From positions 258,373 through 322,372 of IMG/VR virus record IMGVR_UViG_3300031951_000001: a stretch of 64,000 nucleotides of DNA; one strand, 5' to 3'. A program made the position numbers and the translations under genes. Under the pieces are notes generated by a model. It was not told where the DNA came from. It worked only from the letters and a program-made list of their open reading frames with translations, and did no database searches. This document shows positions 1,291-64,000 of this stretch, one piece after another; within the stretch, counting starts at the first letter, position 1, and the number at the start of each line of letters is the position of its first letter.

Positions 1291-1307
1291 TAAAAACCAA
1301 CTTTTCA

Positions 1308-1314
1308 TATTTAT
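1308..1314 (+). promoter_or_regulatory. TATTTAT putative late-promoter motif
   Basis: Intergenic, 26 nt before ATG 1341; the motif recurs before many genes in the window. Confidence 0.5.
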
Positions 1315-1340
1315 GTATAAGGGTTAAAAAATAAAATAAT

Positions 1341-33000: not shown

Positions 33001-35416
33001 TTCTGAAAGTTTACCAGTTACTGTGACGGACCAATCCCAATCACCAGAGTGTATCACAGTTGAGTTTATACCTGTTACAAAAACACCGACTCCAACACCT
33101 ACTAAAACTCCAACACCTACCGTGACTATGACGATAACGCCAACTTCAGGTGCAACAGAAACACGGACTCCGACGCCGACTACCACTCAAACTTCAACAC
33201 CAACAATAACATCTACGATTACTCCGACAATAACGGCAACACCAACAAGAACGGCGACTCAAACACCAACAATAACAAGAACGGCGACTCAAACACCAAC
33301 AATAACAAGAACGGCGACTCAAACACCGACAATAACAAGAACGGCGACTCAAACACCGACAAGAACTGCGACACCAACAAGAACACCAACTAGAACGGCA
33401 ACAAATACTCCATCGATTACCCCAACCATAAGTATAACTCCAACAATAACCTCAAATTTACCATGTAAATGTTTTAATTTTTACAATACAAGTGATACGG
33501 TAAATGGTACTCTTATATACACTGCTTGTAATTTAACAGTTAGTTCTACAACGGTATCGGCTAATTCATTTGTACAATTGTGTGTAAATTTAAGCGGATA
33601 TAGTGGGTCATCACAAATAACATTTGTTAACCAAGTTGGTTCATGTGTAAATGGTTTTTGTCCTAACATATCTATAAATTCTTGTGATTTGTTATCGGTT
33701 AAAAAAGAACCTTCTGGTCCGACTAATGGTCTTTGGCAGATTATGAGTATTAGAAACGAAAGTCTTTTGTATTTGCCGGTTTCTGGTAGAACTGTAGGAA
33801 CCAACGCTTTAGCGAGAACGTCTAATAAAGTTTGGGTACTAGGATTTTTTACGGCATTAGGTGGTTCTAGAATAAGGGAATACTCAATTACCCAAAATCC
33901 TTGGTCTGCGGTGGTGACTAATAACTATACATTACCGACAAATTTGCCGTCTGTTATCGACAATGGTATGGCGGCAATCGATGATGAGAATTTTATTGTT
34001 GGGTCCGGAACTGCATTGAATGTTATTGCAAAATTAAATGTTTCAGGTGGAATTTTATCATCTACTAAAATTATAGATTTAATATCACCATTTACGGTTT
34101 TTGGTGACATGATTTATACTACAACCAATAAAGTCATAGTTGCGGTTAAAAATACAATTAATACTAACATATGGCAAATTCACCAATATGATGTTAATGG
34201 GACTTTTGAACTGGCGGTAGACGTTTCATCTATATCTTTATTTAATTCCGGAATAAATTTCGCGGTAGTTAATAACCAATTATATTTATTACCACATAAT
34301 CAAACATATAATAATTATTATTTAATTAATTTAAATAATCCTTACAATACCACAATTCAGTCGGCTCTTGGAGGTAGTGCCCCAAATGACGTTGCTCAAA
34401 ATCCTGAATGTATTAATATTCAGTTTATCCCTTCTACACAGACACCAACACCAACAAGAACAAAAACTCCGACACCAACAAGAACTCCAACAAGAAGTGC
34501 AACACCAACAAGAACTCCAACAAGAAGTGCAACACCAACAAGAACTCCAACAAGAAGTGCAACACCAACAAGAACTCCAACAAGAAGTGCAACACCAACA
34601 AGAACACCAACAATAACCATGAGTCCGTCGATTACACCAAGTCGAACAGTAACAATGACACCTTCATCTATTGGTATCTATACTCAACCATTGATGGTAA
34701 GTTTTTCTGGAACATCTACTGTAATATCAAGATACGATGTAACAACAAATACTATTACAACTTTAGATGTACAAAGTTCCGGTATTTTACCAAATCAAGA
34801 TATTGCATGTACTCAAAATAAATTTTGGTTATCAAATCAGGGGTCTGGTAACATAATAAAAGAATATACTTATACCGCGTCACCTTTCAATTATGTGTTG
34901 AATAGAACTTTGAATATACCAGTTACATTGACTGATGGATTAACTGTAAGGACTGTGGGAGGTATTGAATATTTGATTGGATGTACAGGTAATACAACTA
35001 TTGTTGAAATGGATATATCATCAACAACGGCCATAGTTACCGATAAATTTGATTTACCTCTTAACAGAACCATAGGTGCTGATATGATGTATACTAATAC
35101 TGGAAAATTAATAGTTGCCAACTATTCAGGTGGTAATACAACAGTCGGATTTATGACGCAGTATAACTATGAAACAAATACTTTAGAGATTGATAGGGCA
35201 TTACCAACTACTTATGCTGCTGGCGGTCAAAAAGTTTATTTTGTATCTAATAATAATATCTATAGTACTAGTATCTCTGCTAGTCTTTCGGTTGTTTATC
35301 AATGGAATACAGATAGTAATATTAACAATCCACTTCCATTACAATCCTTCGAGTTACCACTACTTCGTGGAAGCGCTCAACCACAAGAATTCATAAACAT
35401 TAATTTCACCTCATAA
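24068..35416 (+). CDS. Giant modular fibre/adhesin-like protein: Thr-Pro linkers, seven ~230 aa beta-rich modules and small Cys-rich modules
   Basis: 3782 aa uninterrupted ORF; recurring 'DIA.T..KLW...I.E(W/Y).IT..PF.A...R.I' and 'GD...T..GK.I' modules. Confidence 0.8.
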   Translation: MPTALIQSVNYAGQYGDITFNPQTGGTVSVGVQLLPFNYVADYVYGVYVVCFSAFSVCCEFNLLAPTPTPTATITKTPTITPTETVTPTKTPTPTITPTMTMTPTPSTIFCVDCVESGYTYVFSCAPTPSITRTPSVTPTITYTPTQTSTKTPTQTPTTTQTPTITKTSTQTPTITKTSTPTRTLTPTGTNPPSVPECAVIFNSLQNVFFYDVDTDTTTQLIVPDTVGSATNDIAHTSSKLWMASASEIYEWDITLSPFTAVFNRVITLPSGIGPGLGAINNTTLIAVQSGGNPKQVVSVNITTNTAVFTTLFPMLINRGVAGDIILTTTNKVIITTNATAAPFGQFITQYNFLNGDPEVDIQLNPTITQPWGIFQDNGEIYIMDGNETNNVFHIDKNYPYTITLTGDTGYSVYGASQLPNCLDVNFIPQITPTPTQTPTQTPTTTQTPTVTVTETITNTPTNTPTPTKTPVSCDCFEITAVGNNAVIDYFKCGSEGVSVRKLIEPARPFKVCLENSGVTTLSGVTQISNFGPCIDGECASPTPTPTVTQTPTNTLTPTITPTNTLTPTITPTETQTPTITSTSTQTPTSTQTITPTLTQSPTPTVTLTNTVTPTITETPTSTATQTPTTTTTQTPTSTETPTTTQTPTSTQTPTTTQTPTTTQTPTNTMTVTPTPVCIDGCSVLYVDSESLIYSYDYNTETSTVIFDPKATVRDIANTSSRLFITIVNRIQRYSFSTCPVSVTLIDEITRLFLGDGLFAINDTTLIITSTQAIGQENVQELNYITNTVTPKFSLPTGYSVRGDFILTTGGKFIVSMFQGLSNYILQYDYSTGEQEVLFQVSQIIAGFFEFGGNIYAVDTSGIVYQAILDSPWGLVSTTLDPLTFTGVIKGTSQELSCLPTNFNIVTPTPTPTQTPTPTVTVTETPTMTVTETPTQTETPTQTPTNTETPTQTSTPTPTPTLDCFCYTFVNTSLLDKQNVSGKDCNNINFEYSLQISGSEGDTVSLCASSSLVLDPFIAVFNNGVCEGFCGTSTPTPTPTETPTPTITDTPTQTPTITETNTQTPTQTPTNTVTETSTSTPTPTQTETPTNTVTSTPTNTVTSTPTITSTSTQTPTVTSTPTPSITEYKPAIRTFSGCCFPFEIFKLYEIPGLTANTITEGTVYYIESGVFSGCATNIAETFTQNNYLFVNISAQTSCSGCSASYPCPSSTPTPTVTSTPTVTPTITSTPTITSTPTQTETPTQTETPTQTQTSTVTSTPTESPTSTQTQTQTQTQTVTPTKTSTPTRTPIECVCYSITNIGEFFGSYNGILCNGGPSGGIPIGPGVTFTACYAKGSLQTVGGTLTFLENGSCENSILCPTRTPTPTRTGTPTPTPTTTETPTNTVTPTTTTTETPTSTSTQTPSVTNTITSTPTQTLCCTSWTLYGGLGQLLDNGFVIKPPLRVGDDFALIPTNVGSPGTLVGQVLELISVSPPLSPQYFTILTATFNPINSAYLLTFTPTLTINLGSTFQSIIYNIYQSGGTQFNVYNCGGSLTTLNLNNNEILVIPCSYDVQVISGFGYAESDPSCVCVTQTPTPTLTPTVTSTITQTPTNTVTVTQYTCNCYFINVPDIRDGVNLVFLDCLGSLISIAPNNFGNYCVREIIDYGSGTAELVGLCIDGNCPTPTPTPTQTETPTPTETPTQTITQTPTVTQTSTPTVTQTSTPTVTITESATQTQTPTPTETPTNTLTPTVTITESVTPTRTLTPTKTQAPCLSSCDVLLLDNVGRVYIYNSVTNSPLYLGIDGPDGSFDIAHTNNKIWLNRGTSLYEYDIILCPFSATFSREISGSTAFSAGLFAINDTTLIANNGATPSSILEIDVSTNPYTVTTKFSLLPGRRVSGDYVLTNSGKLIVSNFSGTNPNAPTGVYITQYNYITSATPPVDNNVDILISPTIVFPYGLYQYGGGFYILSANGTQYTLDLNPPYTLTAAPTVPLPPNTINAAYFGASQSNGCFDNNIVPVSPTPTSTPTPTPTPTATITQTPTITQTSTPTPTITSTVTQTPTQTQTPTSTITVTPTQTSTVTSTPTVTSTPTPTITEYKPAIRTFSGCCFPFETFKIFEIPGLTANSITEGTVYYIESVGFSGCATNIAETFTQNNYLFVNLSAQTSCSGCSTNYPCPSSTPTPTVTSTPTLTPTQTQTPTQTQTPTETSTQTPTETSTQTPTQTQTSTQTPTNTQTSTNTPTTTVTPTLTRTPDTCNCYTFFNISTSQSLTVDFIDCTGLQNQITINYGNSAQVCVKNNIFSGTPSGALVSFLNGDCTNGCPTTTIQACNPFVVNGTNRIIYTYDPITNTQIPLPINTESVSIYDIATNDNYLWIYGNFATLGNGIKEYFITTSPFTSSLNRFISGSTLYQSTRNGLAVLNNTTLITASGTAGNVIVSLNISSNTWVATPLFTLPTNRVLRGDLTYTNTGNIIALTYNNVAGTGSFLTQFDLFGNQELEFQIGNSVEGFGLFMYNSQIFTVASSSASPAVVRRDLNFPYTSLTVNNMTITNVGFAQPLSCLNVNFIGVTRTPTQTPTPTPTPTTTKTNTPTSTQTQTQTPTRTSTPTNTQTPTITSTSTITPTVTRTATITPTVTRTSTITPTVTRTSTITPTITQTATQTNTPTVTQTATVTQTATQTPTPTETSNLFACTCYNFFNTSNNQPGTVTYYNCDGVFSSVTVSATSYVQLCVSGNSTNPLYTATTQITAIDELGDCTVSCPTINLDSCISFLAGGPGNIIQSYDFQTNTTTFLPIPNRPWSMLGIANTSNKLWVHGTYLGFTSGGIREWDITFSPFSATYNGRTINIQSNTILPNSNACGLVAIDNFNLLSVSGATAGSQSVVNVDISDTITNNAVFTKLFDLPSNRRILTDLVFTQTGKIIIMTQTTTPVKIFITQYDILGNIEVDVPLFTSGIDANSGWSILINSNNLYIVRATTPGEIYQVNLTSPYSATLLSESLPVTVTDQSQSPECITVEFIPVTKTPTPTPTKTPTPTVTMTITPTSGATETRTPTPTTTQTSTPTITSTITPTITATPTRTATQTPTITRTATQTPTITRTATQTPTITRTATQTPTRTATPTRTPTRTATNTPSITPTISITPTITSNLPCKCFNFYNTSDTVNGTLIYTACNLTVSSTTVSANSFVQLCVNLSGYSGSSQITFVNQVGSCVNGFCPNISINSCDLLSVKKEPSGPTNGLWQIMSIRNESLLYLPVSGRTVGTNALARTSNKVWVLGFFTALGGSRIREYSITQNPWSAVVTNNYTLPTNLPSVIDNGMAAIDDENFIVGSGTALNVIAKLNVSGGILSSTKIIDLISPFTVFGDMIYTTTNKVIVAVKNTINTNIWQIHQYDVNGTFELAVDVSSISLFNSGINFAVVNNQLYLLPHNQTYNNYYLINLNNPYNTTIQSALGGSAPNDVAQNPECINIQFIPSTQTPTPTRTKTPTPTRTPTRSATPTRTPTRSATPTRTPTRSATPTRTPTRSATPTRTPTITMSPSITPSRTVTMTPSSIGIYTQPLMVSFSGTSTVISRYDVTTNTITTLDVQSSGILPNQDIACTQNKFWLSNQGSGNIIKEYTYTASPFNYVLNRTLNIPVTLTDGLTVRTVGGIEYLIGCTGNTTIVEMDISSTTAIVTDKFDLPLNRTIGADMMYTNTGKLIVANYSGGNTTVGFMTQYNYETNTLEIDRALPTTYAAGGQKVYFVSNNNIYSTSISASLSVVYQWNTDSNINNPLPLQSFELPLLRGSAQPQEFININFTS
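33245..33366 (+). repeat. Near-perfect 30 bp tandem repeat (~4 copies) encoding TRTATQTPTI
   Basis: Unit acaagaacggcgactcaaacacc(a/g)acaata. Confidence 0.85.
34472..34605 (+). repeat. Perfect 30 bp tandem repeat (4 copies plus a partial) encoding TPTRTPTRSA
   Basis: Unit acaccaacaagaactccaacaagaagtgca. Confidence 0.9.
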
Positions 35417-40012: not shown

Positions 40013-42385
40013 ATGGATTTGTTTAATCCCCCACCAAATTTCAACTATAAAAAAATGATTCATAAGTTAGATACTAATTCGCTTGATAATCCATACATAC
40101 AGGTCGTATGGGAGGATTATGCTGAAAATATCACGCAAGAAAAGATAAAAAGCGTAAGACATTATTTTCAAAAGAAGTATCTATCAACAAATGTTAATGT
40201 CATAACCAAGACAAAGACATCTGATGAGACCGTTCAGACAGTTGATATTTCATTCAATGTATTGGATAAGAATTATCAACTTGAATTAATGAAGTCTTTT
40301 TTAACTAATAAGGGTAATGATAACCTTTATGATGAAATTTATAAGTTGGATGGTATTGTTGATAGTAAGTTGGCGATGGATGACTCTGAAGTAACACCAT
40401 TCAAACGGTGGTATATCAAAAAAATAGAGTTCTCTAACTTTCTATCATATGGGGAAAATCAAGTTGTTGATTTCACAAAGTGTGATGGTATCACGGTGAT
40501 TGAGTCTAACCCACCAAACTTTGGAGGTAAGACCGTATTGTCGGTTGACTTGTTATTGTTCCTATTCTTCAATGAGACTACCAAGACATCAAAGGCTGAA
40601 GAGGTATTCAATCGTTTCACGGATAAGAACAAGGTATCTGTCAAAGGTGAAATCATTATTGATGGTGATGAATACATTATTGTTCGTAACATTGAACGTA
40701 AGAAGTCTAAAGCTGGTGATTGGAATGTTAAGACCGAGCTAGACTTCTTTAAGAAACTATCTGATGGTAGTCTTATGAATTTCACTGGTGAGCAAAGACG
40801 TGAGACTGAAACGTTTATCAAGAATTCTATTGGGTCAAAGGAAGATTTTCTTATGACTATCCTTACAACGGCAACTAATCTTGAGGATTTGATTGACTCT
40901 AAACCAACAGCTCGTGGTCAAGTGTTATCACGATTTATGGGTCTTGAGTTTCTAAAACGTAAGGAAGACGCTGCGAAGGAAGTGTTCAGTGAGTTTTCAA
41001 AATCAATGATTTCAAATGTTCATAATAGTGAGCAATTGAAAACTGAAATTGAGAATTGTAAAAACGGTATTCAAGAACATAAGAATACCATTGGTGAGAG
41101 ACAGAGTGAATTAATTGATGTTCAGAACAGAATTATCAAAGGTCAAGAATATCGTGATGGGTTGTTAAAGAACAAACACACCGATATTGATAAAGAGATT
41201 AGTATGGTACAACCGGCTCAAGTTAAGTCCGAGATTGCCGACCTAAACTTCAAGAAAGATGTTGTGGTTAAACAATTATCTGAAGTCAAAGTTGTTGAAC
41301 CATCCAAGTATTATCACGAAGACAAACACGATAAAGTTAAAGATGAATACAACAAATCATTTAAACAAATGGTTGAGGTTGAAAGTAAGATTAAATCAAT
41401 TGAAGAATTAAAGAGTTCTGTTGAAGGTGGAATAAAATGTGAACACTGTGGAATTGACTTAATGATGGCCTCAATTACACAATCTAAAATTGCCGAACTT
41501 GATGGTTATATCCAGCAAAAAGACCAAATTTATACCACAATGCAGGTTTTAACCAGCACAGAACAAACATTTGTTAGACTTAAAAAAGAATTTGATGAAT
41601 ACGAAAAGAATAAACTAGTCAAAGAAAAACTCGACTTGAGCATTGAAAGTTTTGATATGAAAATTGAGAAACTCCATGACAAATTGAAAAAGTACGAAGA
41701 GGCCCAAGACAAAATTCAAGAAAATACCAAAATTGAAGAACAACTCCTCAAAGCCAATATGAGACTTGACGATTTGGAAAATCAAAAAACGTCAGTTAAT
41801 AATGAGTTAACTCGTCTCAACTTTGACATTGAAAAACTTAATGATAAGATTGATAATAACAATAAGATTATTGAGAAGATAAAGCAAGAAGCGGAGAGAG
41901 AAAAAATCTATAAAGTTTATTTGGAGATTTATGGTAAGAACGGAATTTCAAAGATTATCATGAAAACCATGATGCCACTTATCAACTCTGAACTTCAAAG
42001 ACTTTTAGAAAACAGTTGTCATTTCAGATTGGAAATTCAAATTAATGAAAAGAATGAGGTTGAATTCATCATGGTTGATAACAATACCCAAGTTGAAAAA
42101 CTTATGTCATCAGGGTCAGGGTATGAACGTACAATAGCATCGCTGGCGTTAAGAGCGGTATTAAGTAAGATATGTTCATTACCAAAACCAAATATCATAG
42201 TTTTTGATGAAGTTTTTGGTAAAATATCTAATGATAATCTTGAAATGGTTTCAGAATTTTTCACAAAAATCAAAGATTATTTTGAAAAAATTTTCTTAAT
42301 AACTCACAATCCATTAGTTACCAACTGGTCGGATAATGTTATCAGGATTAGAAAGGAAGAAAATATTAGCTACGTGTCACAATAA
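40013..42385 (+). CDS. sbcC: Rad50/SbcC (T4 gp46-like) SMC ATPase
   Basis: 'IEFSNFLSYG', Walker A 'NFGGKT', coiled coil with CEHC zinc hook, 'SGSGYE' signature, Walker B 'VFDEVFG', 'LITH'. Confidence 0.9.
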   Translation: MDLFNPPPNFNYKKMIHKLDTNSLDNPYIQVVWEDYAENITQEKIKSVRHYFQKKYLSTNVNVITKTKTSDETVQTVDISFNVLDKNYQLELMKSFLTNKGNDNLYDEIYKLDGIVDSKLAMDDSEVTPFKRWYIKKIEFSNFLSYGENQVVDFTKCDGITVIESNPPNFGGKTVLSVDLLLFLFFNETTKTSKAEEVFNRFTDKNKVSVKGEIIIDGDEYIIVRNIERKKSKAGDWNVKTELDFFKKLSDGSLMNFTGEQRRETETFIKNSIGSKEDFLMTILTTATNLEDLIDSKPTARGQVLSRFMGLEFLKRKEDAAKEVFSEFSKSMISNVHNSEQLKTEIENCKNGIQEHKNTIGERQSELIDVQNRIIKGQEYRDGLLKNKHTDIDKEISMVQPAQVKSEIADLNFKKDVVVKQLSEVKVVEPSKYYHEDKHDKVKDEYNKSFKQMVEVESKIKSIEELKSSVEGGIKCEHCGIDLMMASITQSKIAELDGYIQQKDQIYTTMQVLTSTEQTFVRLKKEFDEYEKNKLVKEKLDLSIESFDMKIEKLHDKLKKYEEAQDKIQENTKIEEQLLKANMRLDDLENQKTSVNNELTRLNFDIEKLNDKIDNNNKIIEKIKQEAEREKIYKVYLEIYGKNGISKIIMKTMMPLINSELQRLLENSCHFRLEIQINEKNEVEFIMVDNNTQVEKLMSSGSGYERTIASLALRAVLSKICSLPKPNIIVFDEVFGKISNDNLEMVSEFFTKIKDYFEKIFLITHNPLVTNWSDNVIRIRKEENISYVSQ

Positions 42386-53013: not shown

Positions 53014-53853
53014 ATGTTAAGCTATATAGGAGGTAAATCAAAGATAGGTAAATGGATAGTTCCATATTACCCAAAGGACATGGAAACATATGTTGAAACA
53101 TTCGGAGGAATGTTTTGGTGTTTCTTTAATATGGATTTGAAACAATACCCAAATCTCAAACGGGTTGTTTACAATGACTTCAATCCACTAAATTACAATT
53201 TGTTCATGTGTCTTCAACAACCTGAATTATTATTGTCTGCGGTAAATTCAATACCGTGCCAGCAACAAGGAGTTGAAGTTACACCGGCAATATATAAAGA
53301 ACAGTTTAACGAGTTTCAACAAGAAATATTTGGGGATGGTTTTACAATCAACTATCCTGACTATGATGTCGCGGCAAAATACTCATACGTTCTTACACAA
53401 GTGTTCAGTGGTTCTAAACCTGAAACAAGTTCGTTTATTGATTTAAAGGGTAAGTACAAATCAAAGTATCTTACGTTCAGAGACAAGTTATCTAAACCTG
53501 ATTGGGTAGAACATTTTAACAGGATAAGTCATTTTAGATTGGGTGACTTTGAGAATGTTATTAAGGAGTTTGATAGCTCTACAACTTATTTTTATCTTGA
53601 CCCACCGTATTGGAAAACCGAAAATTACTACTCAAACCATGACTTTGACCGTGATGACCATGAGAGACTGGCAAATGTGTTGAAAACTATTGAAGGAAAG
53701 TTTTCGTTATCTTACTATGATTTCGTACTTTTGTCGGAGTGGTTTCCCCAAGACCAATATAGATGGGAAAAGAAGGAATTTGCTAAGGCCGCCGCAGCAA
53801 AGAAAGGACAATCCCAAAATATGGGTGAGGAGTTGCTAATTATGAATTATTGA
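53014..53853 (+). CDS. Dam-family (D12 class) DNA N6-adenine methyltransferase
   Basis: 'SYIGGKS', 'YVETFGG', 'VYNDFN', 'YLDPPY'. Confidence 0.88.
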   Translation: MLSYIGGKSKIGKWIVPYYPKDMETYVETFGGMFWCFFNMDLKQYPNLKRVVYNDFNPLNYNLFMCLQQPELLLSAVNSIPCQQQGVEVTPAIYKEQFNEFQQEIFGDGFTINYPDYDVAAKYSYVLTQVFSGSKPETSSFIDLKGKYKSKYLTFRDKLSKPDWVEHFNRISHFRLGDFENVIKEFDSSTTYFYLDPPYWKTENYYSNHDFDRDDHERLANVLKTIEGKFSLSYYDFVLLSEWFPQDQYRWEKKEFAKAAAAKKGQSQNMGEELLIMNY

Positions 53854-53877: not shown

Positions 53878-55242
53878 ATGAAGTTTACATCACTTTTAAC
53901 AAATTTGATTTTGGAAAATTCAAGATTCCAAGTTCTTTACGACAAGATGGTTAAACCTGCTAAGGGTCAAGAAGGAGACGCCAGAAAACCTAAAGGTTTG
54001 ATGGACTTTGAAACTTTGAAGCAAATAATTTTTGCTGACCCAACAACCAAAGCACCACAAGGTATGACACCTGAAACTGCAAGTGTTGAGGACATGGAAA
54101 AAGTTAAAGTTGGTAAGTATAGTCAATGGCTGTTGAAGAATTTTGTAATGCCAACTTTTAATGATGAAAGGACAAATATCGAAAAGGGTACTGCTGAATA
54201 CAAAAGAGCGATGGATGAGTATCAAAGATTGTTTATTGAGGACTTGTTTAAAGTTACGGAGGACCTTAAAAAATATGAAAGGTTTAAAAACCAATTCCCT
54301 CAAGACAAGAGAGATATCAACAAATTAACAGTTGATGATGTTTTTGAATTGACTAAAGATTTGAGTCTTGAGAAGACTAAAGCTACAAAATCTGAAAAAG
54401 AAAAGGCAAAAACAACCTATGAACACCCTGGCGCAGAAATCATGTTTAGAGGCCCAAATTGGACTTTAGTTAAAATTGAAGACCAAGGTACTCTCGGTTC
54501 AGACGCCGCTTCATTCTATGGTGGTTATTATCTTTATAATGAAGGAGAGTCAAGATGGTGTACGTCTCCACATAATTCAAATTATTTCAGAACATATATT
54601 AAGGATGGTCCTTTGTATGTTGTATTACCTAATGATGATGGAGGTAGTGTTGGGCAAAAGACAGGTCTTCCACAAGAAAGATATCAGTTCCACTTCCCTT
54701 CAGGACAGTTTATGGATAGAGAAGACCGCCAGATTAATTTGGTTGAATATCTCAACGGTAAAATGTCTGAACTCAAAGAATACTTCAAACCTGAATTTGC
54801 TAAAGGATTGGTAAGTAAAGGTGGTGATAAGGTTGAAATTAACTATCCTGATAGCTCTGCCGGTAAATTCATTGCGTTATATGGTTTTGAAGATTTGTTT
54901 GAGACATTACCTGAAACAATTGAGAAACTTCTTATTACTAATAAATCTAAAGAACAAATTGCTTTGGATGTACCGGAATCATTGGGTAGATTCACTAATC
55001 TTGATGGTTTGTTACTTAACAATATTATTAGGTCTTTACCGGAATCGATAAGTAATCTTCAAAAACTTAAATTCTTGTCTTTGAATAATAACAAAAATCT
55101 TGAGTCATTACCGGAAGGTATGGCGGATTTACCAAAATTGGCATTTGTTAATTTGGTTGGTTCTAATCCTAATGTTCAGATACCTGATAGATTGAAAGAA
55201 AAGATGAGTGAAGAAATGCCAGGTTTTTGGCATGTTGATTAA
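53878..55242 (+). CDS. Protein with a 'WCTS' domain and C-terminal leucine-rich repeats
   Basis: 'SRWCTS', 'RYQFHF'; LRR units 'LPESISNLQKLKFLSLNNN', 'LPEGMADLPKLAFVNL'. Confidence 0.7.
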   Translation: MKFTSLLTNLILENSRFQVLYDKMVKPAKGQEGDARKPKGLMDFETLKQIIFADPTTKAPQGMTPETASVEDMEKVKVGKYSQWLLKNFVMPTFNDERTNIEKGTAEYKRAMDEYQRLFIEDLFKVTEDLKKYERFKNQFPQDKRDINKLTVDDVFELTKDLSLEKTKATKSEKEKAKTTYEHPGAEIMFRGPNWTLVKIEDQGTLGSDAASFYGGYYLYNEGESRWCTSPHNSNYFRTYIKDGPLYVVLPNDDGGSVGQKTGLPQERYQFHFPSGQFMDREDRQINLVEYLNGKMSELKEYFKPEFAKGLVSKGGDKVEINYPDSSAGKFIALYGFEDLFETLPETIEKLLITNKSKEQIALDVPESLGRFTNLDGLLLNNIIRSLPESISNLQKLKFLSLNNNKNLESLPEGMADLPKLAFVNLVGSNPNVQIPDRLKEKMSEEMPGFWHVD

Positions 55243-55585: not shown

Positions 55586-55617
55586 TTTGGCAGGACAGGA
55601 TTTCCGATGTATATTTG
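55586..55617 (+). promoter_or_regulatory. Bacteroidota-type promoter TTTG-N20-TATATTTG
   Basis: TTTG 55586-55589 and TATATTTG 55610-55617; implies the CDS starts at 55644. Confidence 0.7.
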
Positions 55618-55643
55618 TACCACAATTAAAAACAATAAACCCC

Positions 55644-56393
55644 ATGATGACAATCCAAGAACTTCAATCAGCTACCCCATCAGTATTCAACACTCAAAAG
55701 TCAAGTAAACTTTCAGACCGTTACGTGGTTGTACCAACCATTGAGGTTATCAACAACTTCATTGACGCAGGTTGGCAAGTCGCAAGTGCCAAACAAGTAG
55801 GTCAAGGAATGTTCGCTAAACATTCTGTTCGTCTTCGTAACTCGGACCTTCCTAAAGTAGGTGACTCACTAGTTGAGGCAATCATCACCAACTCTCACGA
55901 TGGACGTACCAAACTCCAAGTTGGGGCAGGTCTATACCGACTTGTATGTTCAAACGGACTTGTAGTCCCAATGCAAGAATTGGTTAACATTAACCAACGT
56001 CATATGAACATTCAGATGGATGAGGTTTACCAAATCACAGAGAAGTTTCTTGAGATTAGTCCTGTGATTGAGCGTTCAGTAAATCGTATGATGGAGAAGG
56101 AAATGTCAATGGATGAAAAGATTGACTTCACAACCAAAGCTATCGGAGTACGTTGGAAGAACACAGAGGACATCTCAACACTGACTCTCGAGTCAATTGT
56201 TAATCCACTCCGTGTTGATGACTTCGAAAGCACTTTGTGGAATACCTTCAATGTAGTCCAAGAGAAGTTGATTCGTGGGGGATTTGTTAAAGAGCAAGGT
56301 CGCAACAAGCGTACAGTGAAACCAATCACTTCACTGAACATGGACACCATGATTAACCAAAAGTTGTGGGAACTTGCCGAAACATTCATCTAA
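55644..56393 (+). CDS. DUF932 (DUF945)-family protein
   Basis: 'SDRYVVVPT', 'KHSVRLR', 'NSHDG', 'GLYRLVCSNGLV', 'LWNTFNVVQEKLIRGG', 'NQKLWELAE'. Confidence 0.85.
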   Translation: MMTIQELQSATPSVFNTQKSSKLSDRYVVVPTIEVINNFIDAGWQVASAKQVGQGMFAKHSVRLRNSDLPKVGDSLVEAIITNSHDGRTKLQVGAGLYRLVCSNGLVVPMQELVNINQRHMNIQMDEVYQITEKFLEISPVIERSVNRMMEKEMSMDEKIDFTTKAIGVRWKNTEDISTLTLESIVNPLRVDDFESTLWNTFNVVQEKLIRGGFVKEQGRNKRTVKPITSLNMDTMINQKLWELAETFI

Positions 56394-56448: not shown

Positions 56449-57519
56449 TTATTTAGAAACTTCCCACCATTTAGGACCTTCGTTAGATAAAAAGTCTACC
56501 TTTTTTTCATTTTTACCACCCATTGATACAACCCAAGTAATCATAGCTTCTCCATCTTTACTCAGTAATTTAGTTCCTGGAGTTGCTAATCTTTCCCCAT
56601 GGACACTATGAAAAATAATCGGAATTCCGTTTTTAATTGCACCTACATAACCAACGTGTGTATTAAAAGTAAATGGTGTTTTGTCTTGATAAATACCGGT
56701 TTTGTCTAATTGTCTATTTTGGACAGCTCTTTCACAAAATGCTTTTCCTTTATTACCTGAGTTACCATAGTACATACCAACAATATCCCCAACCTTTAAA
56801 GATGAAAGATTTACGTTTGATTTGGATGGATAAAAACTAGAAATGGTTGATGAAATTTTACTACCATTTTTACAACTTTTATCTTTACCCTCACCTTCTA
56901 GCTCAAAACAAGAACAAGAGTCCGAGTTTACAAATTTTGAGTTTCTAATATTGTCCCAATTAATCGAACCGTCGGTGAACATATTATATAAAACTGACCC
57001 TTTAGTTTTTGCGTTAACAAAAGCTTGCCACGCATTTCCAAGATAGTTACCCGTCATTTTTCTAACATATTCAGAACATCCTTCACCACCGCCATTACCA
57101 ATTGTGGACTCATTTTTATCTGAAATTTTATTACAAAGTGTATTATCAACCGCAACACAACTCTCTGTTCCCGACACTTTATTTTTTTCCTCAGATTTTT
57201 TTTGTAAAGACTTAATACCCATACTCATTACAGTTTTTGTATCTATTTTACCTGTAATTGGTAAGTTATTATCTTTTTGATATTTTTTTAAAGCGGTTAT
57301 TGTTTTTCCCCCAAAAATCCCGTCAACTCCGTCTAAATTTTTTCCACTCCTACCCAATAAACTACCATATTTAGGTTTAAGTTTTTTTTGTACGTCATAC
57401 ACAGTTTGGGAAAAACCTTCATCTAATCTAATTTTATTTTTTGATTTTGAAATGGCTTCTTTGTGTAAATTCAAAATTCTACTTTGTTCTTCTTCGGATA
57501 TTAGTAATTTTTTTAACAT
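56449..57519 (-). CDS. Peptidoglycan-binding domain + CHAP/NlpC-like cysteine hydrolase
   Basis: 'DGIFGGKTITALKKYQKDNNLPITG' (PG_binding_1); 'GCSEYV...GNAW', 'VGDIV', 'THVGYV' Cys-His dyad. Confidence 0.75.
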   Translation of the reverse strand: MLKKLLISEEEQSRILNLHKEAISKSKNKIRLDEGFSQTVYDVQKKLKPKYGSLLGRSGKNLDGVDGIFGGKTITALKKYQKDNNLPITGKIDTKTVMSMGIKSLQKKSEEKNKVSGTESCVAVDNTLCNKISDKNESTIGNGGGEGCSEYVRKMTGNYLGNAWQAFVNAKTKGSVLYNMFTDGSINWDNIRNSKFVNSDSCSCFELEGEGKDKSCKNGSKISSTISSFYPSKSNVNLSSLKVGDIVGMYYGNSGNKGKAFCERAVQNRQLDKTGIYQDKTPFTFNTHVGYVGAIKNGIPIIFHSVHGERLATPGTKLLSKDGEAMITWVVSMGGKNEKKVDFLSNEGPKWWEVSK

Positions 57520-59172: not shown

Positions 59173-60879
59173 ATGACTGAACTTCTATCAAAAAGGTTTG
59201 AGACCTTCGTGTCGTTGGAGCATCACGACTTCAATGAGTTAACTTTTACCGAAGAACAAGACGACTTAAATATTTTTTCCCTTTCAAATGGGAGGTTTTG
59301 GGAGGGAAGATTATCGTTCTCACTAAAACAAAAACACACGAGCAAGGAGGTATTTGAGGAAAACTTCAAAAATCCTTTGTATAATCTATTTCATAGAAGG
59401 ATGACTGGTGTTGTTGCTGCGGATGATGAGAGGATAACATTAAAGTTTTTTTTGTATTCAAGAAACCGAAGACCTGATGAGAAGTTTGTAAGAATTACTA
59501 CAAATTGTGTTTACATGACCTATAACTTCAAAAAGAATTGTCTTTATACGGGAATTGTAAATGGATATCATAAAAAGAAAAAAGTTAATAAGTCAGTTAA
59601 GATTGTGTCATTTTCTAACGATACGGTAAATGATTTGTTGGGTAAATACATAACATGGTTTCATTTTGTTCATGAAAATTTACCTGAAAAGAAAACCACC
59701 AAAAATGGTTTTTATGATTTGTTAAGTACGTTTATAGATAACATACCTGGCGTAGTTTATGACAATGAAAAGTATGGTACTAAAACCATCCATAAGACTA
59801 TTTTAACCAAAAAGAATATTAAGTTATCCGACAATTGGTCTTCATTTTCTTGTCATTTTCCCCAACCAAAGGCGAAAGACTTCAAGAAGTATGGTGATAG
59901 ATATCTCAATGTGATAATGGAGATTAATGGTTTAAAGGGTGATAAGATACGTAGAGTATTACATAAGATTAAAAACTTTAACCCTTTGGTGTATCACAAG
60001 GCAGTCCGTTTCTTTGGTAAAGATTATCTTTTGGGAAAGTCTGATGACGAACTACAAAATATATTTGAGACAACTTGTATGGGGGATTTTCTTAATATGA
60101 ATTTTGCCTCAATACACTCAAAGAAAGAACGCAATTGTATTTTTGAAATATTCAAATTGGTTATTAACGATGAAATTAATCCCCAAACATTTGCGGACCA
60201 TTTCATTTTCTATACTAACTTGAAAAACTATGAAAACATCAAATGGACCTCGACAACGTATGATGAGTTTAGGGAAGAACATTTGAATTGGACGGAGTTA
60301 AATGACTTTTATACCAAAGGAACGTTCGATAGAATATATAACGATAAATTTGAGAGTGAGGTTACCAAACCAATATTTACAGATGGGAAAACTTTCTATC
60401 CTGTAATTCTGAAAAGTTCCTCAGAATATAATGACGAATCATTTATTCAATCTAACTGTGTTAAAGGTTATATCAAACGACCTGACGCTTTGATAGTATC
60501 ATTGAGAAAAGATAGTCCTGATTCTAAAGAAAGAGCGACTATTGAGTTTAGAATTAGTTTTGATACTGTTATAGAACTTAAGAGAGTACAAACCCTCGGA
60601 AGATTTAATAAATCACTAACTTTGGAATGGGATAACATTTTACCTATATTAGATAAAAGAATTAATGATTTGGTATATACATTTGATACACCAAAGATAA
60701 AGTGTAAAATTGGATATATTGAATTCACATCAGAGTCTAAATTTGTTGATTATAATAAGATAAGACTTAATAGACCATTAATGAGATTTTATGATTCTTC
60801 GGATAATTCATTGGAGTGGGAGGATAAAAGAGTTAATAACATAAATGATATCGCAATACCTTTGCTAGAAGAATTTTAA
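59173..60879 (+). CDS. PcfJ-like domain protein
   Basis: C-term 'ESFIQSNCVKGY', 'RATIE', 'VQTLGRFN'. Confidence 0.65.
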   Translation: MTELLSKRFETFVSLEHHDFNELTFTEEQDDLNIFSLSNGRFWEGRLSFSLKQKHTSKEVFEENFKNPLYNLFHRRMTGVVAADDERITLKFFLYSRNRRPDEKFVRITTNCVYMTYNFKKNCLYTGIVNGYHKKKKVNKSVKIVSFSNDTVNDLLGKYITWFHFVHENLPEKKTTKNGFYDLLSTFIDNIPGVVYDNEKYGTKTIHKTILTKKNIKLSDNWSSFSCHFPQPKAKDFKKYGDRYLNVIMEINGLKGDKIRRVLHKIKNFNPLVYHKAVRFFGKDYLLGKSDDELQNIFETTCMGDFLNMNFASIHSKKERNCIFEIFKLVINDEINPQTFADHFIFYTNLKNYENIKWTSTTYDEFREEHLNWTELNDFYTKGTFDRIYNDKFESEVTKPIFTDGKTFYPVILKSSSEYNDESFIQSNCVKGYIKRPDALIVSLRKDSPDSKERATIEFRISFDTVIELKRVQTLGRFNKSLTLEWDNILPILDKRINDLVYTFDTPKIKCKIGYIEFTSESKFVDYNKIRLNRPLMRFYDSSDNSLEWEDKRVNNINDIAIPLLEEF

Positions 60880-60881
60880 TT

Positions 60882-61238
60882 ATGGAAAAAGTACCACAAC
60901 ATTGTATAGATAAGTTTAGACAGAAGTTTGGACAATATCCCTCAATTATTGAGTTTGATTATGATAGTGTAGATAACTTTGACAAATTGACGACAAGGTC
61001 ATATACTATTTGGTTTAAATCAATTTTCACTGACAAAGGTGTTAATTTTATAGAAAAATATATCGAGTATGACGCGTCAGGTATTCATTTCTATGTAGAA
61101 AAATTAGGAGAAAATAAAGTCAAAATATTTATAATGACAACACCTGATAGATACAGTGTTGCTGAATTTACAATAAATAATTTAATTAAAGCAAAAAATG
61201 GAAATTACAAGCAAAGAACTCCAAGAGAAAATGAATAA
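60882..61238 (+). CDS. Hypothetical protein
   Basis: 118 aa ORF. Confidence 0.6.
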   Translation: MEKVPQHCIDKFRQKFGQYPSIIEFDYDSVDNFDKLTTRSYTIWFKSIFTDKGVNFIEKYIEYDASGIHFYVEKLGENKVKIFIMTTPDRYSVAEFTINNLIKAKNGNYKQRTPRENE

Positions 61239-61521
61239 TGGTGAAAAATTTATAGTGGATTTTCACGCCGCGTGGTGTGGTCCCTGTAAAATGTTGAAAC
61301 CGATTTACGAAAAGGTTGCCCAAGATTTGGCATCAAAAAATTCAGATGTTAAACTTTATACAATGAACGTAGATAACAATCGTGATATGGTTGTATCGTT
61401 GGGTGTTCGTAGCGTACCAACAATTAAGAGTTTCGCTAACGGAAAAGAAATGAACACAAGAGTTGGTTTGTTACAAGAAAACGCACTTTTGGACCTAGCA
61501 AACAATTTGTTAAATGGATAA
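61198..61521 (+). CDS. trxA: Thioredoxin
   Basis: 'VDFHAAWCGPCK', 'VRSVPT'. Confidence 0.92.
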   Translation: MEITSKELQEKMNNGEKFIVDFHAAWCGPCKMLKPIYEKVAQDLASKNSDVKLYTMNVDNNRDMVVSLGVRSVPTIKSFANGKEMNTRVGLLQENALLDLANNLLNG

Positions 61522-61798
61522 GTTAGTTATAGTTTTCACAATGGACGGTTGTCCATTTTGTGAGATGATGAAAACCCAATTGGTTGAGAGTCAGATTGAG
61601 TTTGTTGAGAGAAATATCAATACTCATGCCGACGAATATCAATTGTTTGTTGAAGCAACTGGTAGTGAGTTTGTTCCGGCATTCATGATTATTGATGACC
61701 CATATGGGGAACCAAAGTCAGAAGGTTTTGTTCCTGACAAACACTACAATACAATAGAAGAAGGTATTCAAATTATTAAAAATAAATTAAACGGATGA
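61514..61798 (+). CDS. Glutaredoxin/NrdH-like protein
   Basis: 'FTMDGCPFC', 'FVP'. Confidence 0.8.
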   Translation: MDKLVIVFTMDGCPFCEMMKTQLVESQIEFVERNINTHADEYQLFVEATGSEFVPAFMIIDDPYGEPKSEGFVPDKHYNTIEEGIQIIKNKLNG

Positions 61799-62319
61799 AT
61801 CTATCATTTAACAAACACGGACAACTACACATACCAATAAAGAAATGGGATTTAGATGACGGAAATATTTTAGTGATATATCAAGGGTCTCGAGGAGCGA
61901 ACCCCGATTTGGACTTTATTGTCAAATATAAAGCACCAAACAAAAGATTGAGAGCTCCATCTCACACACATTGGATTGTTGATTTGATTGTTAAATCTAG
62001 TCATTCATCATCCGATGTGTGTGACTTTGTTTCTGATTGGATTGAATTATATGATAAGATAGAACCATTCAATTCAACCGAGGAGAGAGACAACTACGAA
62101 TTAATCTACAATGAGTATTTCTGTGATACTTATACAACCATAGATAACTTGGGTCATTTATCTGTGGAATTTTTGTCAGCACTTATTGAGTTATTCATTA
62201 AGTGTGAAAAACAAACTCCTGGTGCTTTCATGTTTAAAAATCTTTTACAGTTAGTTAGGGACTTCTGTAATGGCAAGAAAGATTTTTATCAGGTGGTTTC
62301 TTATTCTAAACGAGTTTAG
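61795..62319 (+). CDS. Hypothetical protein
   Basis: 174 aa ORF; 'RAPSHTHWIVDL'. Confidence 0.65.
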   Translation: MNLSFNKHGQLHIPIKKWDLDDGNILVIYQGSRGANPDLDFIVKYKAPNKRLRAPSHTHWIVDLIVKSSHSSSDVCDFVSDWIELYDKIEPFNSTEERDNYELIYNEYFCDTYTTIDNLGHLSVEFLSALIELFIKCEKQTPGAFMFKNLLQLVRDFCNGKKDFYQVVSYSKRV

Positions 62320-63143
62320 ATAATATATAATTCAGATATCTTGTCACCAACTAACCAAGGTTTGGTTTCTAGTTGTGTGTCTAAATCATTACTTATATCG
62401 TAACCCTTGAGATATTTTTTCTCAAATCTTTGAATATTAAAATCGAACACGTCCAATACCATCGATTTAATTTTCTCATTCATATATGGGGAGTTACTTA
62501 ATATATCGATAATAGGGTCGTTTGTTTCCTCATCAATAACGTCGGTATATTTTATTGACATGTTTGTTGCTTTAATTGCTTTGAATAGCTGATACGCGAT
62601 GTATTCACAGTAATAAAATGCAGACCTACCGTTGTTTAGACTATACCCATATGGGAACTCAGACTGTCTTGAACCTCTAATGTCTTTAAATGAATAATCT
62701 ATTGGTTTTTCAATGTATTCATTGGTGTATATCAAAAGCTTATCCGTGTAATCTACCGCTTCCCAAATGTCAGAATGATTATATACATAATTTAAAACTC
62801 TCTCATGGAATATAGGTCTTACACTATTGAAAAATTCAAAACAAAATTCTTTCTTTTCTCGATGTAAGTATTCACAGTCATATTTGATTAAATCAATCGT
62901 ATTAATGTTTTTGATACCTAATGTAGATAATTGAGATTTCATCTTTTCAAAAAATGATTCTTTGATTGAATCTAAATCAATTATTTTCTTTGATGATGTT
63001 TTGCCCTCAACAACAAAGAATGGCTCAAATTGTGTTACTCTAATTTCAGTGTATGGATTACCATCTTTAGATATTTCCGACATGATATAATCAGCGAATT
63101 TATTAACGATACCGATTCTGTAATTAGGATAAATATACTTCAT
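62316..63143 (-). CDS. Degenerate S-adenosylmethionine synthetase (MetK)-like protein
   Basis: 'NKFADYI', 'VVEGKTSS', 'GRSAFYYCEYIA', 'VFDF' occur in MetK-like order, but the catalytic motifs are missing; ATG 63143 preferred. Confidence 0.5.
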   Translation of the reverse strand: MKYIYPNYRIGIVNKFADYIMSEISKDGNPYTEIRVTQFEPFFVVEGKTSSKKIIDLDSIKESFFEKMKSQLSTLGIKNINTIDLIKYDCEYLHREKKEFCFEFFNSVRPIFHERVLNYVYNHSDIWEAVDYTDKLLIYTNEYIEKPIDYSFKDIRGSRQSEFPYGYSLNNGRSAFYYCEYIAYQLFKAIKATNMSIKYTDVIDEETNDPIIDILSNSPYMNEKIKSMVLDVFDFNIQRFEKKYLKGYDISNDLDTQLETKPWLVGDKISELYII

Positions 63144-63190
63144 AAAACTGTTTTGAAATTGATAGTGAAAAAAATCCACATATTAAATAG

Positions 63191-63225
63191 AAAAAGGGGA
63201 ATAAATTCCCCCTTTAATTTTTTTT
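63191..63225. terminator. Probable terminator hairpin
   Basis: aaaaaggggaat-aa-attccccctttaa followed by a T run; imperfect inverted repeat downstream of the minus-strand 47 aa gene. Confidence 0.55.
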
Positions 63226-63246: not shown

Positions 63247-63390
63247 TTATTTCTTATAATACTTCTCAACAACCTTATTTACCTGTTCTTGAACAGTTTG
63301 GTTATTTTGAGGCGTTTGAATTTGACCAGGTGCTGGTTGAGCAGGTGCCGCTTGAGCTTCTGCCTGTTTGTTTTTACATCCACATCCCAT
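63247..63390 (-). CDS. Small MGCGC-start peptide
   Basis: 47 aa MGCGCKNKQAEAQAAP...VVEKYYKK; TATTTAT upstream on the minus strand (63434-63440). Confidence 0.65.
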   Translation of the reverse strand: MGCGCKNKQAEAQAAPAQPAPGQIQTPQNNQTVQEQVNKVVEKYYKK

Positions 63391-63506: not shown

Positions 63507-64000
63507 ATGGGTAAAATAAAACTCACGGAAAGTGAATTTAAGAAGTTTTTGAGGATTACGCTTGTCGAGCAAAGTGAGGAAGAATACTACAAAATTTCAC
63601 CAGAAGAATTTTCAGAGTTGATGAAGTTCGGTGGATATCACGGAAAAAGTGTAACAAAATTAAAAATGTTTGGAGGTAAACCAATTTGGATTACTGGTGA
63701 TTTGATTTTAAATGATACACCTACCGATTCATTAGGTAATGTTAAATATATTGAGGGTAGATTAGATATTAGACATACAAACATAAGTGATTTGTCAGGT
63801 GTTGAAGTTAAAAATTATACTTGGGACTCTGGAACACCGAGGGAGGCAAGACGTAAAGCTGAAGAAAGAAGAAAAAAATTACAAAGCGCCGAGGAGAGAA
63901 GATTCAATAAGGAGTGGGATATCGATAATCCTGATATTACTGAACTAGGTGAAAAGGCAAATGCTCTATATGATATGTTGGTTAAAGATAGAGAAATCGA
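63507..64000 (+). CDS. Partial CDS with the leader motif and LRR-like units (runs off the window)
   Basis: MGKIKLTESEFKKFLRITLVEQ...GDLILNDTPTDSLGNVKYIEGRLDIRHTNISDL; no stop before 64000. Confidence 0.75.
   Translation, partial: MGKIKLTESEFKKFLRITLVEQSEEEYYKISPEEFSELMKFGGYHGKSVTKLKMFGGKPIWITGDLILNDTPTDSLGNVKYIEGRLDIRHTNISDLSGVEVKNYTWDSGTPREARRKAEERRKKLQSAEERRFNKEWDIDNPDITELGEKANALYDMLVKDREI

What the first reader, a model, noticed from the sequence alone, without database searches (positions are those of the whole stretch)
62316..63143. Eroded MetK-like protein, a possible SAM-synthetase decoy
Seen: segments resemble MetK in order (NKFADYIMSEI ~ DKICDQISDAI; VVEGKTSS ~ VAGEITT; GRSAFYYCEYIA ~ DRSAAYAARYVA; VLDVFDFN ~ V...FDL), but GHPDK, GAGDQG and GGGAFSGKD are absent and the protein is ~275 aa. 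Established: MetK is oligomeric, SAM fuels type I R-M and BREX defence, and T3 SAMase both degrades SAM and binds MetK. Inference: a catalytically dead subunit that poisons or retunes host MetK, or a SAM-binding protein. The similarity is by eye and weak.
Basis: inference. Interest (0 to 1): 0.65.

Follow-up and report, generated by a model that had tools for sequence, protein, structure and literature searches.

The report
Phage-only catalytically stripped MetK-fold protein
A 275-residue protein of a 322-kb freshwater jumbo phage has the fold of the enzyme that makes S-adenosylmethionine but has lost every catalytic loop; it belongs to a conserved, phage-only, undescribed family whose function, possibly control of the host's SAM supply, is untested.

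Summary
Window 62316-63143 (-) is an intact 275-aa ORF. Its AlphaFold2 model (pLDDT 92.8) matches only S-adenosylmethionine synthetases over its full length (Foldseek E 4e-11; VIA Z 16.8, 267 of 275 residues aligned).

It is not a decaying gene. There are 329 viral loci and 329 cluster representatives at 50% identity, none in 185,579 prokaryote species genomes. dN/dS is 0.07 and synteny is fixed.

GHPD, GAGDQG and GGGxFSGKD are absent in 155 of 155 members. None of 15 MetK catalytic or ligand residues is kept. The loops that carry them are cut to stubs, while nearly all core helices and strands remain. It is therefore very probably a pseudoenzyme of the MAT fold, and I found none described.

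The decoy idea is neither shown nor refuted: the one complex prediction with a Flavobacterium MetK gave no verdict. Two phage DNA methyltransferases lie within 10 kb and the phage has no MetK of its own. That argues against plain SAM starvation and leaves modulation of host MetK, ligand binding or an unrelated scaffold role open. A conserved 47-aa CGCK protein sits just upstream in 44 of 47 loci.

The parts
62316..63143 (-). CDS of the MetK-fold protein (275 aa; stop codon at 62316-62318). It keeps three beta-alpha-beta-beta-alpha-beta modules, the middle one shrunken.
   Evidence: ORF and translation. AF2 pLDDT 92.8. Only MAT structures match. dN/dS 0.067.
62415..62627 (-). Residues 173-243, the part still recognisable as the S-AdoMet_synt_C core (RSAFYYCEYIA helix to the LDVFDFN motif).
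   Evidence: Pfam PF02773 E 0.015. TIGR01034 E 0.048. hhalign E 3.4e-4, residues 171-270 to E. coli MetK 271-375.
62625..62663 (-). Residues 161-173, the S-E-F-P-Y-G-Y-S-L-N-N-G-R loop. It is the most conserved motif of the family and stands where MetK has about 45 residues (GGPxGDxGLTGRK ... GGGAFSGKDPSKVD).
   Evidence: Conservation: S161 99%, P164 95%, G166 99%. Secondary-structure comparison.
63192..63215 (-). GC-rich hairpin plus T-run (intrinsic-terminator-like) between the small upstream ORF and the MetK-fold gene.
   Evidence: 10-pair stem; 5 terminator-like sites against 0.5 expected in shuffles.
63247..63390 (-). Conserved 47-aa ORF (MGCGCKNK..., Q/P-rich middle, ...VNKVVEKYYKK), same strand, about 100 nt upstream. 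Possible partner; function unknown.
   Evidence: Present upstream in 44 of 47 distinct related loci. No Pfam or NCBIfam hit.
61795..62319 (+). Context: convergent 174-aa ORF of unknown function whose end overlaps the end of the MetK-fold gene by 4 nt. Syntenic in relatives.
61198..61798 (+). Context: thioredoxin (61198-61521) and glutaredoxin (61514-61798), conserved convergent neighbours even of a short 231-aa family variant.
53014..53853 (+). Context: Dam-like (D12 class) N6-adenine DNA methyltransferase, a SAM user 9 kb away. A second one (N6_N4_Mtase) lies about 3.4 kb away across the end of the permuted record, at genome 2517-3230.

Best explanation
Shown: the gene encodes a conserved, phage-exclusive, miniaturised member of the methionine adenosyltransferase (MetK/MAT) fold. 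Almost the whole structural core is kept, but every catalytic loop (GHPDK, gating loop plus GAGDQG, GGPxGD...GRK, GGGAFSGKD) has been cut out. It is a pseudoenzyme maintained by purifying selection.

Inferred: it works by binding rather than by catalysis. The bacterial MAT fold is otherwise known only as an obligate dimer whose flat beta-sheet faces pair and whose active sites need both subunits (established knowledge of MetK). The gene also sits among SAM-consuming phage DNA methyltransferases in a phage that has no MetK. The most likely role is therefore a non-catalytic MAT-type subunit that pairs through that sheet face with host MetK and changes SAM production during infection.

The direction of the effect is open. 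It could be inhibitory and dominant-negative, depriving SAM-dependent defences. It could be stabilising or activating, like a prozyme, feeding the phage's methylases.
For: Fold.

Homology in a consistent register from Pfam, TIGRFAM and hhalign. The family keeps MetK's non-catalytic invariants (D25, G55, R273, Y277, W368).

Loss of catalysis: 0 of 15 catalytic or ligand residues kept; motifs absent in 155 of 155 members. Loops are excised while helices and strands map almost one to one. The middle module is the least conserved and is partly deleted in 215-250-aa variants.

Maintained function: dN/dS 0.067, 329 viral loci, fixed synteny at 39% identity.

Phage-only: no hit in one genome of each of 185,579 prokaryote species.

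SAM context: two DNA methyltransferases nearby, and no MetK in this phage or in four related records, three of them rated complete.

Precedent that phages target MetK: T3 SAMase (PMC8406200; bioRxiv 10.1101/2023.02.27.530186).
Against: No evidence of any contact with MetK; the one complex prediction gave no verdict.

The MetK loops that make up much of its dimer interface are the ones deleted here, so complementarity with MetK is not obvious.

Only about 8 positions stay conserved across the whole family, which is few for a large interface against a very conserved target.

The phage's own methyltransferases need SAM, which argues against the inhibitory version.

Expression was not demonstrated. 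Coordinates of the model were not available, so conserved residues could not be mapped onto the sheet face.
Confidence: 0.35

Rival explanations
1. A scaffold or adaptor unrelated to SAM. The MAT fold is merely reused as a stable three-module platform, perhaps working with the conserved 47-aa CGCK protein encoded just upstream. Examples would be a virion or assembly factor, or a nucleic-acid or protein binder.
For: No SAM, Met or ATP-contacting residue is kept. The tight gene pair with the small ORF occurs in 44 of 47 loci. The single modules resemble KH/RbfA/ring-building domains at Z 5-7. It is a core, syntenic gene of one jumbo-phage clade, as structural or housekeeping phage genes are.
Against: Nothing positive links it to virion or assembly genes. 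The neighbours are thioredoxin, glutaredoxin and DNA methyltransferases. Module-level Z 5-7 is within the background range stated by the tool.
Confidence: 0.28
2. A ligand-binding protein or an enzyme with new chemistry. It would form a homodimer whose remodelled inter-subunit cleft binds or converts a small molecule. Candidates are SAM, SAH, methionine, or a defence signal such as the SAM-AMP made by type III CRISPR systems of Bacteroides. In that case it would act as a sponge or a degrading enzyme.
For: The best-conserved residues are polar or glycine and lie in loops and strand ends that correspond to the MetK active-site region: N14, T49, D84, Y88, S161, P164, G166, S168, R/K173. SAM-AMP signalling exists in Bacteroidota hosts and phages counter it with lyases (PMC10600005, PMC12255297).
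Against: No conserved His, Lys or acidic cluster of the kind nucleotide enzymes need. Only N14, G47, S161, G166, S227, D231 and W263 survive across the family. MetK's SAM contacts are lost. No ligand test was possible.
Confidence: 0.22
3. It is still a working, minimal SAM synthetase that uses non-canonical residues and supplies the neighbouring methyltransferases.
For: MAT fold. The phage needs SAM and has no other MetK. Full-length metK genes are common phage cargo elsewhere.
Against: All triphosphate-, Mg-, K- and methionine-binding residues and the three signature motifs are gone in all 155 members. About 31 residues around the P-loop-like segment are deleted. Scores are 15.7 against a cut-off of 25 bits (Pfam) and 12.6 against 309 bits (TIGR01034).
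Confidence: 0.05
4. The resemblance to MetK is chance or a modelling artefact.
For: Sequence-only searches are weak: PDB phmmer and hmmsearch found nothing, and hhalign probability is only 38%.
Against: The model was built without templates at pLDDT 92.8. It aligns end to end with bacterial, Campylobacter-type and archaeal MATs, far above the next fold. Independent HMMs agree on the register.
Confidence: 0.02

Closest known systems
Bacterial S-adenosylmethionine synthetase MetK (PF00438/PF02772/PF02773; TIGR01034), e.g. E. coli MetK, PDB 1xra/7r2w, 5h9u, 4le5
   Same: Same three-module fold over the whole length (Z 16.8, 267 of 275 residues aligned). Same order of helices and strands. Shared non-catalytic invariants (D25, G55, R273, Y277, W368 in E. 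coli numbering with Met1), plus the D of the FDL motif and the PW of the C-terminal motif.
   Different: 275 against about 384 aa. GHPDK, GAGDQG and GGGAFSGKD are absent. 0 of 15 catalytic or ligand residues kept. One helix (MetK 196-211) is missing and the long hairpin 161-190 is cut to 129-140. All family scores are below the curated cut-offs. Found only in phages.
Full-length phage-borne metK (e.g. Streptococcus prophages Javan series, Staphylococcus phage UPMK_1)
   Same: A MAT-fold gene carried by phages, often near DNA methylases or HNH genes.
   Different: Those are canonical enzymes, 42-65% identical to E. coli MetK with all motifs. This family shares no detectable BLAST similarity with them and has no PHROG.
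T3 SAMase / SAM lyase, which also inhibits MetK by polymerising it (PMC8406200; bioRxiv 10.1101/2023.02.27.530186)
   Same: A phage protein aimed at the host SAM supply, showing that MetK is a phage target. If the inhibitory reading is right, the outcome would be the same.
   Different: Unrelated fold (a small alpha/beta barrel-like protein) and an enzyme. It binds the outside of MetK tetramers. T3 keeps its DNA unmethylated, whereas this phage carries two methyltransferases.
Prozymes of trypanosomatids (dead paralogue of AdoMetDC that heterodimerises with and activates the enzyme; PMC6221367)
   Same: A catalytically dead homologue of an enzyme of SAM-linked metabolism that could act by heterodimerising with the live enzyme.
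   Different: Different fold and kingdom, and encoded by the same genome as its partner. Heterodimerisation is proven there and untested here.
Archaeal MAT (PF01941; PDB 7p82)
   Same: Another very divergent branch of the same fold (Z 11.1).
   Different: Archaeal MAT is about 400 aa and catalytically active. There is no Pfam hit to it here.

Membership tests
MetK / methionine adenosyltransferase | Three-domain MAT fold | tested here: met
   Foldseek E 3.8e-11, all top hits MAT. VIA Z 16.8 and 16.7 over 267-270 residues. Atlas TM 0.73.
MetK / methionine adenosyltransferase | Score above the curated family cut-offs (Pfam N, M and C domains; TIGR01034) | tested here: not met
   Only PF02773 at 15.7 bits against a cut-off of 25; no hit to PF00438 or PF02772. 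TIGR01034 at 12.6 bits against 309.4.
MetK / methionine adenosyltransferase | GHPDK motif (catalytic His14, Mg-binding Asp16, Lys17) | tested here: not met
   GHPD in 0 of 155 members against 29 of 30 MetKs. Aligned residues are S/Y8, R/K/I10 and G11.
MetK / methionine adenosyltransferase | GAGDQG motif and gating loop (Gln98, Asp118) | tested here: not met
   0 of 155. 16 residues between MetK H101-104 and E121 are reduced to 3 between phage H91-95 and E99.
MetK / methionine adenosyltransferase | GGGAFSGKD triphosphate loop with Lys245, Lys265, Lys269, Asp271, and Asp238 and Arg244 of GGPxGDxGLTGRK | tested here: not met
   0 of 155. MetK 226-270 (45 residues) corresponds to phage 155-168 (14 residues). 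D271 aligns to G172; the lysines have no counterpart.
MetK / methionine adenosyltransferase | SAM synthesis from ATP and methionine | not testable with these tools
   Needs an enzyme assay or metK complementation.
MetK / methionine adenosyltransferase | Dimer through the flat sheet face with shared active sites | not tested
Dead-paralogue regulator or decoy of an enzyme (prozyme-type or dominant-negative subunit) | Homologue of the enzyme with catalytic residues lost but under selection | tested here: met
Dead-paralogue regulator or decoy of an enzyme (prozyme-type or dominant-negative subunit) | Physical association with the active enzyme (host MetK) | tested here: inconclusive
   Complex prediction with METK_FLAJ1: scores 0.30 and 0.00 against a mark of 0.32, no verdict.
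Phage SAM lyase (T3 SAMase / Svi3-3 type) | SAM-lyase fold | tested here: not met
   No SAM-lyase chain is among the listed fold matches. PDB 8bb1 matched through its MetK chain A.

The most novel reading that the evidence does not exclude
A phage-encoded pseudo-MetK that heterodimerises with host MetK. Each MetK active site needs residues from both subunits, so one dead partner would disable both sites. That would shut off SAM and with it the SAM-dependent defences of Bacteroidota (type I/III restriction, BREX, SAM-AMP-signalling type III CRISPR). It would be the first dominant-negative enzyme mimic used as a phage counter-defence, and the first MAT pseudoenzyme.
Probability: 0.15. Interest if true: 0.85.

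Novelty: new variant of a known kind. Interest (0 to 1): 0.6.

Why it matters
The MAT fold has so far been known only as SAM synthetase. No MAT pseudoenzyme turned up in the literature searches. This family has no Pfam or PHROG model and only one uncharacterised relative in BFVD.

A non-catalytic branch that is large, phage-exclusive and selected shows the fold has been recruited for something else. The gene neighbourhood points to SAM and DNA methylation.

If it modulates host MetK, it would add a new principle to phage control of host metabolism and defence: mimicry of an enzyme subunit. It would also give a natural protein tool for tuning SAM synthesis. If it does something unrelated, it is still a clean example of an enzyme reduced to its scaffold.

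Tried and rejected
Searches that found nothing:
- PHROGs: no family.
- tblastn against 50,697 phage records: no match.
- phmmer and profile hmmsearch against PDB sequences: nothing relevant.
- ESM Atlas feature search: no usable hit.
- hhalign in global mode: failed; only local modes align.
- hhalign against single E. coli MetK or a 23-sequence gammaproteobacterial MetK alignment: only E 0.12 and 0.017. A broader 155- against 30-sequence comparison was needed to reach E 3.4e-4.
- The HMMER profile search of 1.84 billion representatives reached no MetK-length protein among the 150 listed hits. No intermediate form was found, and distant members at 23-30% identity also lack the motifs.

Complex prediction: F. 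johnsoniae MetK plus this protein scored 0.30 and 0.00, under the 0.32 mark, and the controls were not run. This is no evidence for or against binding.

Expression: the runs laid are contigs. One metatranscriptome (X20) holds an identical 151-nt piece at 63051-63201, but DNA carry-over cannot be excluded, so expression is not shown.

Considered and rejected:
- A decaying pseudogene. Rejected: intact in hundreds of loci, dN/dS 0.07.
- The upstream small ORF as a leader peptide for attenuation. Rejected: its protein sequence is conserved at both ends, and the hairpin lies about 30 nt past its stop.
- The GTG start at 63179. Rejected: it lies 13 nt from the hairpin, and homologues start at the ATG.

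No SAM-cycle or radical-SAM genes were found in the phage, and no C5 methylase.

Full report
WHAT IS THERE

The window is the last 64 kb of a 322,372-bp virus record rated complete. On the minus strand, 63143 to 62316 is an intact ORF of 275 aa.

A GC-rich hairpin with a T-run lies at 63192-63215. A conserved 47-aa ORF lies at 63247-63390 on the same strand. The pair is an inverted islet between plus-strand genes. Downstream and convergent are a 174-aa ORF, glutaredoxin and thioredoxin. Upstream and divergent is an ORF that runs off the end of the record.

The record is circularly permuted. In collinear relatives the ORF that runs off the end is 455-464 aa. It is followed by DUF3310 and an N6_N4 DNA methyltransferase. 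In this genome that methyltransferase sits at 2517-3230, about 3.4 kb from the gene across the record's ends. A Dam-like methyltransferase is at window 53014-53853.

IS THE MetK RESEMBLANCE REAL?

Sequence methods alone are weak but consistent:
- Pfam S-AdoMet_synt_C: E 0.015, residues 173-243. 13 of 50 homologues hit the same model.
- TIGR01034 metK: E 0.048, same register.
- hhalign of a 155-sequence family alignment against 30 MetKs: E 3.4e-4 for residues 171-270 against E. coli 271-375. A permissive alignment spans 5-273 against 12-378.

Structure settles it:
- An AlphaFold2 model built without templates from 50 homologues has pLDDT 92.8 and pTM 0.90.
- Foldseek against the PDB returns MAT/MetK chains only (best E 3.8e-11).
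- The Foldseek-independent search gives Z 16.8 (5h9u), 16.7 (4le5) and 11.1 (archaeal MAT 7p82), with 267-270 of 275 residues aligned. The next fold is at Z 6.8.
- The ESM Atlas gives TM 0.73 to a MAT cluster.

The N-terminal helix segment is about four residues off.

WHAT HAS BEEN LOST AND WHAT IS KEPT

I folded a MetK 97% identical to E. coli's to obtain its secondary structure and compared it with the phage model.

The elements that map in order (MetK to phage):
- E3-11 to E3-4
- H16-34 to H9-27
- E39-47 to E32-39
- E50-58 to E42-49
- H65-76 to H57-74
- E91-97 to E81-87
- H101-104 to H91-95
- E121-128 to E99-105
- H137-154 to H114-122
- the long hairpin E161-190 to E129-140
- E222-225 to E150-154
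- H271-288 to H169-190
- E294-301 to E194-203
- E310-314 to E210-216
- H323-333 to H222-232
- H338-344 to H237-245

Only helix 196-211 has no counterpart.

The missing roughly 110 residues are mostly the catalytic loops:
- The GHPDK turn.
- The gating loop plus GAGDQG (16 residues cut to 3).
- Residues 226-270, with GGPxGDxGLTGRK and GGGAFSGKD (45 residues cut to 14).

GHPD, GAGDQG and GGGxFSGKD occur in 0 of 155 family members and in 29 of 30 MetKs.

I listed 15 MetK residues from my own knowledge of the E. coli enzyme's structure literature: H14, D16, K17, E42, E55, Q98, D118, K165, F230, D238, R244, K245, K265, K269 and D271. None is kept.

What the family keeps of MetK's invariants is non-catalytic: D25, G55, R273, Y277 and W368, plus the FDL and PW motifs. 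Keeping the core while losing the active site is the signature of true homology followed by loss of enzymatic function.

IT IS A MAINTAINED, PHAGE-ONLY FAMILY

- The word search found 279 homologues of about 270 aa with no Pfam annotation.
- The exhaustive profile search found 329 cluster representatives at 50% identity. The 150 listed are fragments or proteins of at most about 290 aa, and none is of MetK length.
- IMG/VR holds 329 loci, on contigs up to 322 kb, two of them with terminal repeats.
- One genome for each of 185,579 bacterial and archaeal species holds none.
- dN/dS against a 97%-identical relative is 0.067.
- Synteny holds at 39% identity: small ORF, this gene, then the convergent 174-aa ORF, Grx and Trx. 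A 231-aa variant is still convergent with a glutaredoxin.
- Conservation is concentrated in the first and third modules and in the S161-R173 loop. The middle module is variable and partly deleted in short variants.
- Across the most distant members only N14, G47, S161, G166, S227, D231 and W263 persist.

HOST AND SAM CONTEXT

Shine-Dalgarno motifs are essentially absent: 0-4 of 327 genes. TTTG-N17-23-TAnnTTTG is enriched six-fold upstream of genes, peaking 20-30 nt before starts. A 1162-aa protein carries a SprB repeat. All of this points to a Bacteroidota host, and the phage DNA recurs in lake metagenomes from about 15 studies.

The phage has two DNA methyltransferases. It has no C5 methylase, radical-SAM enzyme, SAH hydrolase or nucleosidase. 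Neither this phage nor four related records, three of them rated complete, has a canonical MetK. The phage therefore uses host-made SAM.

HOW IT MOST LIKELY WORKS

Shown: a MAT-fold protein without the MAT active site, under selection, in a SAM-using neighbourhood.

Inferred: it acts by binding. Bacterial MATs are dimers paired through the flat sheet face, with active sites built from both subunits (established knowledge). A dead subunit that paired with host MetK would therefore alter both sites. Phages are known to target MetK, as T3 SAMase does (PMC8406200; bioRxiv 10.1101/2023.02.27.530186). Dead paralogues that regulate SAM-linked enzymes exist, as the prozyme does (PMC6221367).

I rate modulation of host MetK as the single most likely mechanism (0.35). 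I leave its direction open, because the phage's own methylases argue against plain SAM starvation.

The rivals and my confidence in each:
- An unrelated scaffold role, perhaps with the CGCK mini-protein (0.28).
- A remodelled inter-subunit pocket that binds or converts a small molecule, including SAM-AMP of Bacteroides type III CRISPR (PMC10600005, PMC12255297) (0.22).
- A residual SAM synthetase (0.05).
- An artefact (0.02).

The one complex prediction allowed (F. johnsoniae MetK plus this protein) scored under the mark and is no evidence either way.

COMPARISON AND NOVELTY

Canonical metK genes are common phage cargo (138 records), but they keep all the motifs. This family is a separate, stripped branch. 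It has no PHROG or Pfam family, and BFVD holds one uncharacterised relative. The literature searches found no MAT pseudoenzyme or MetK-like phage protein.

I class it as a new variant of a known kind. It fails every catalytic membership test for MetK while sharing its fold and ancestry.

VERDICT

Interest 0.6.

Noticed in passing
window 63247-63390 (-); also L013, L018, L021, L045, L067 and others, about 100-260 nt upstream of the match: A conserved mini-protein, M(G/S)CGCKNK, then a Q/P-rich low-complexity linker, then IQESI(K/R)KVVEKYYKK, lies just upstream of the MetK-fold gene in 44 of 47 distinct loci. It has no family hit. The N-terminal CxC and the basic amphipathic C-terminus are unexplained.
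   Followed up: partly
whole genome G000 (window = genome 258373-322372): Almost no Shine-Dalgarno sequences (0-4 of 327 genes). TTTG-N17-23-TAnnTTTG motifs are enriched six-fold upstream of genes. This is a Bacteroidota-type expression signal in a 322-kb phage.
   Followed up: partly
window 24068-35416 (+) and 19609-24054 (+): Giant ORFs of 3782 aa and 1481 aa have no Pfam hit at all. They lie in a stretch with strongly negative GC skew (-0.25 to -0.35) and raised GC (about 0.38-0.39) compared with the rest of the window.
   Followed up: partly
window 5254-8742 (+): A 1162-aa protein carries a SprB repeat (the Flavobacterium gliding-adhesin repeat) and a CarboxypepD_reg-like piece. It may be a host-recognition fibre borrowing a host surface-protein module.
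   Followed up: no
window 63507-63998 (+), record end: This ORF runs off the end of the record. In relatives it is 455-464 aa, coiled-coil-like (weak FlxA and AAA_23 hits). The 'linear' record is therefore circularly permuted, and the gene's true neighbours include genome positions 1-3230 with an N6_N4 DNA methyltransferase.
   Followed up: partly
L004/L005 1981-3093 (-); L002/L003 7960-8646 (-): Relatives differ by cargo inserted in the same neighbourhood. One has a glutamine synthetase (Gln-synt_N/C) between DUF3310 and the 76-aa ORF. Others have a GIY-YIG endonuclease next to thioredoxin. Both are absent from this window.
   Followed up: no
window 59173-60879 (+): A 568-aa syntenic ORF has a sub-threshold PcfJ-like match (E 0.0025). 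It is conserved at 574-582 aa in relatives and its function is unknown.
   Followed up: no
window 53878-55242 (+), 55587-56393 (+), 56449-57519 (-), 40013-42385 (+): Other annotated neighbours: a leucine-rich-repeat protein, DUF932, a peptidoglycan-binding endolysin-like protein and an SbcC-like nuclease subunit.
   Followed up: no
window 60882-61238 and 61198-61521 (+): The thioredoxin ORF overlaps the preceding 118-aa ORF by 41 nt in another frame. The thioredoxin and glutaredoxin ORFs overlap by 8 nt. Packing is tight, with no room for ribosome-binding sites.
   Followed up: no
window 63051-63201 and 61750-61961: A marine-labelled metatranscriptome run (X20) holds a 151-nt contig with 0 differences and a 212-nt contig with 1 difference at these places, the first ending inside the hairpin. 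A freshwater phage in a 'marine' RNA library is odd. DNA carry-over or mislabelling cannot be excluded.
   Followed up: partly
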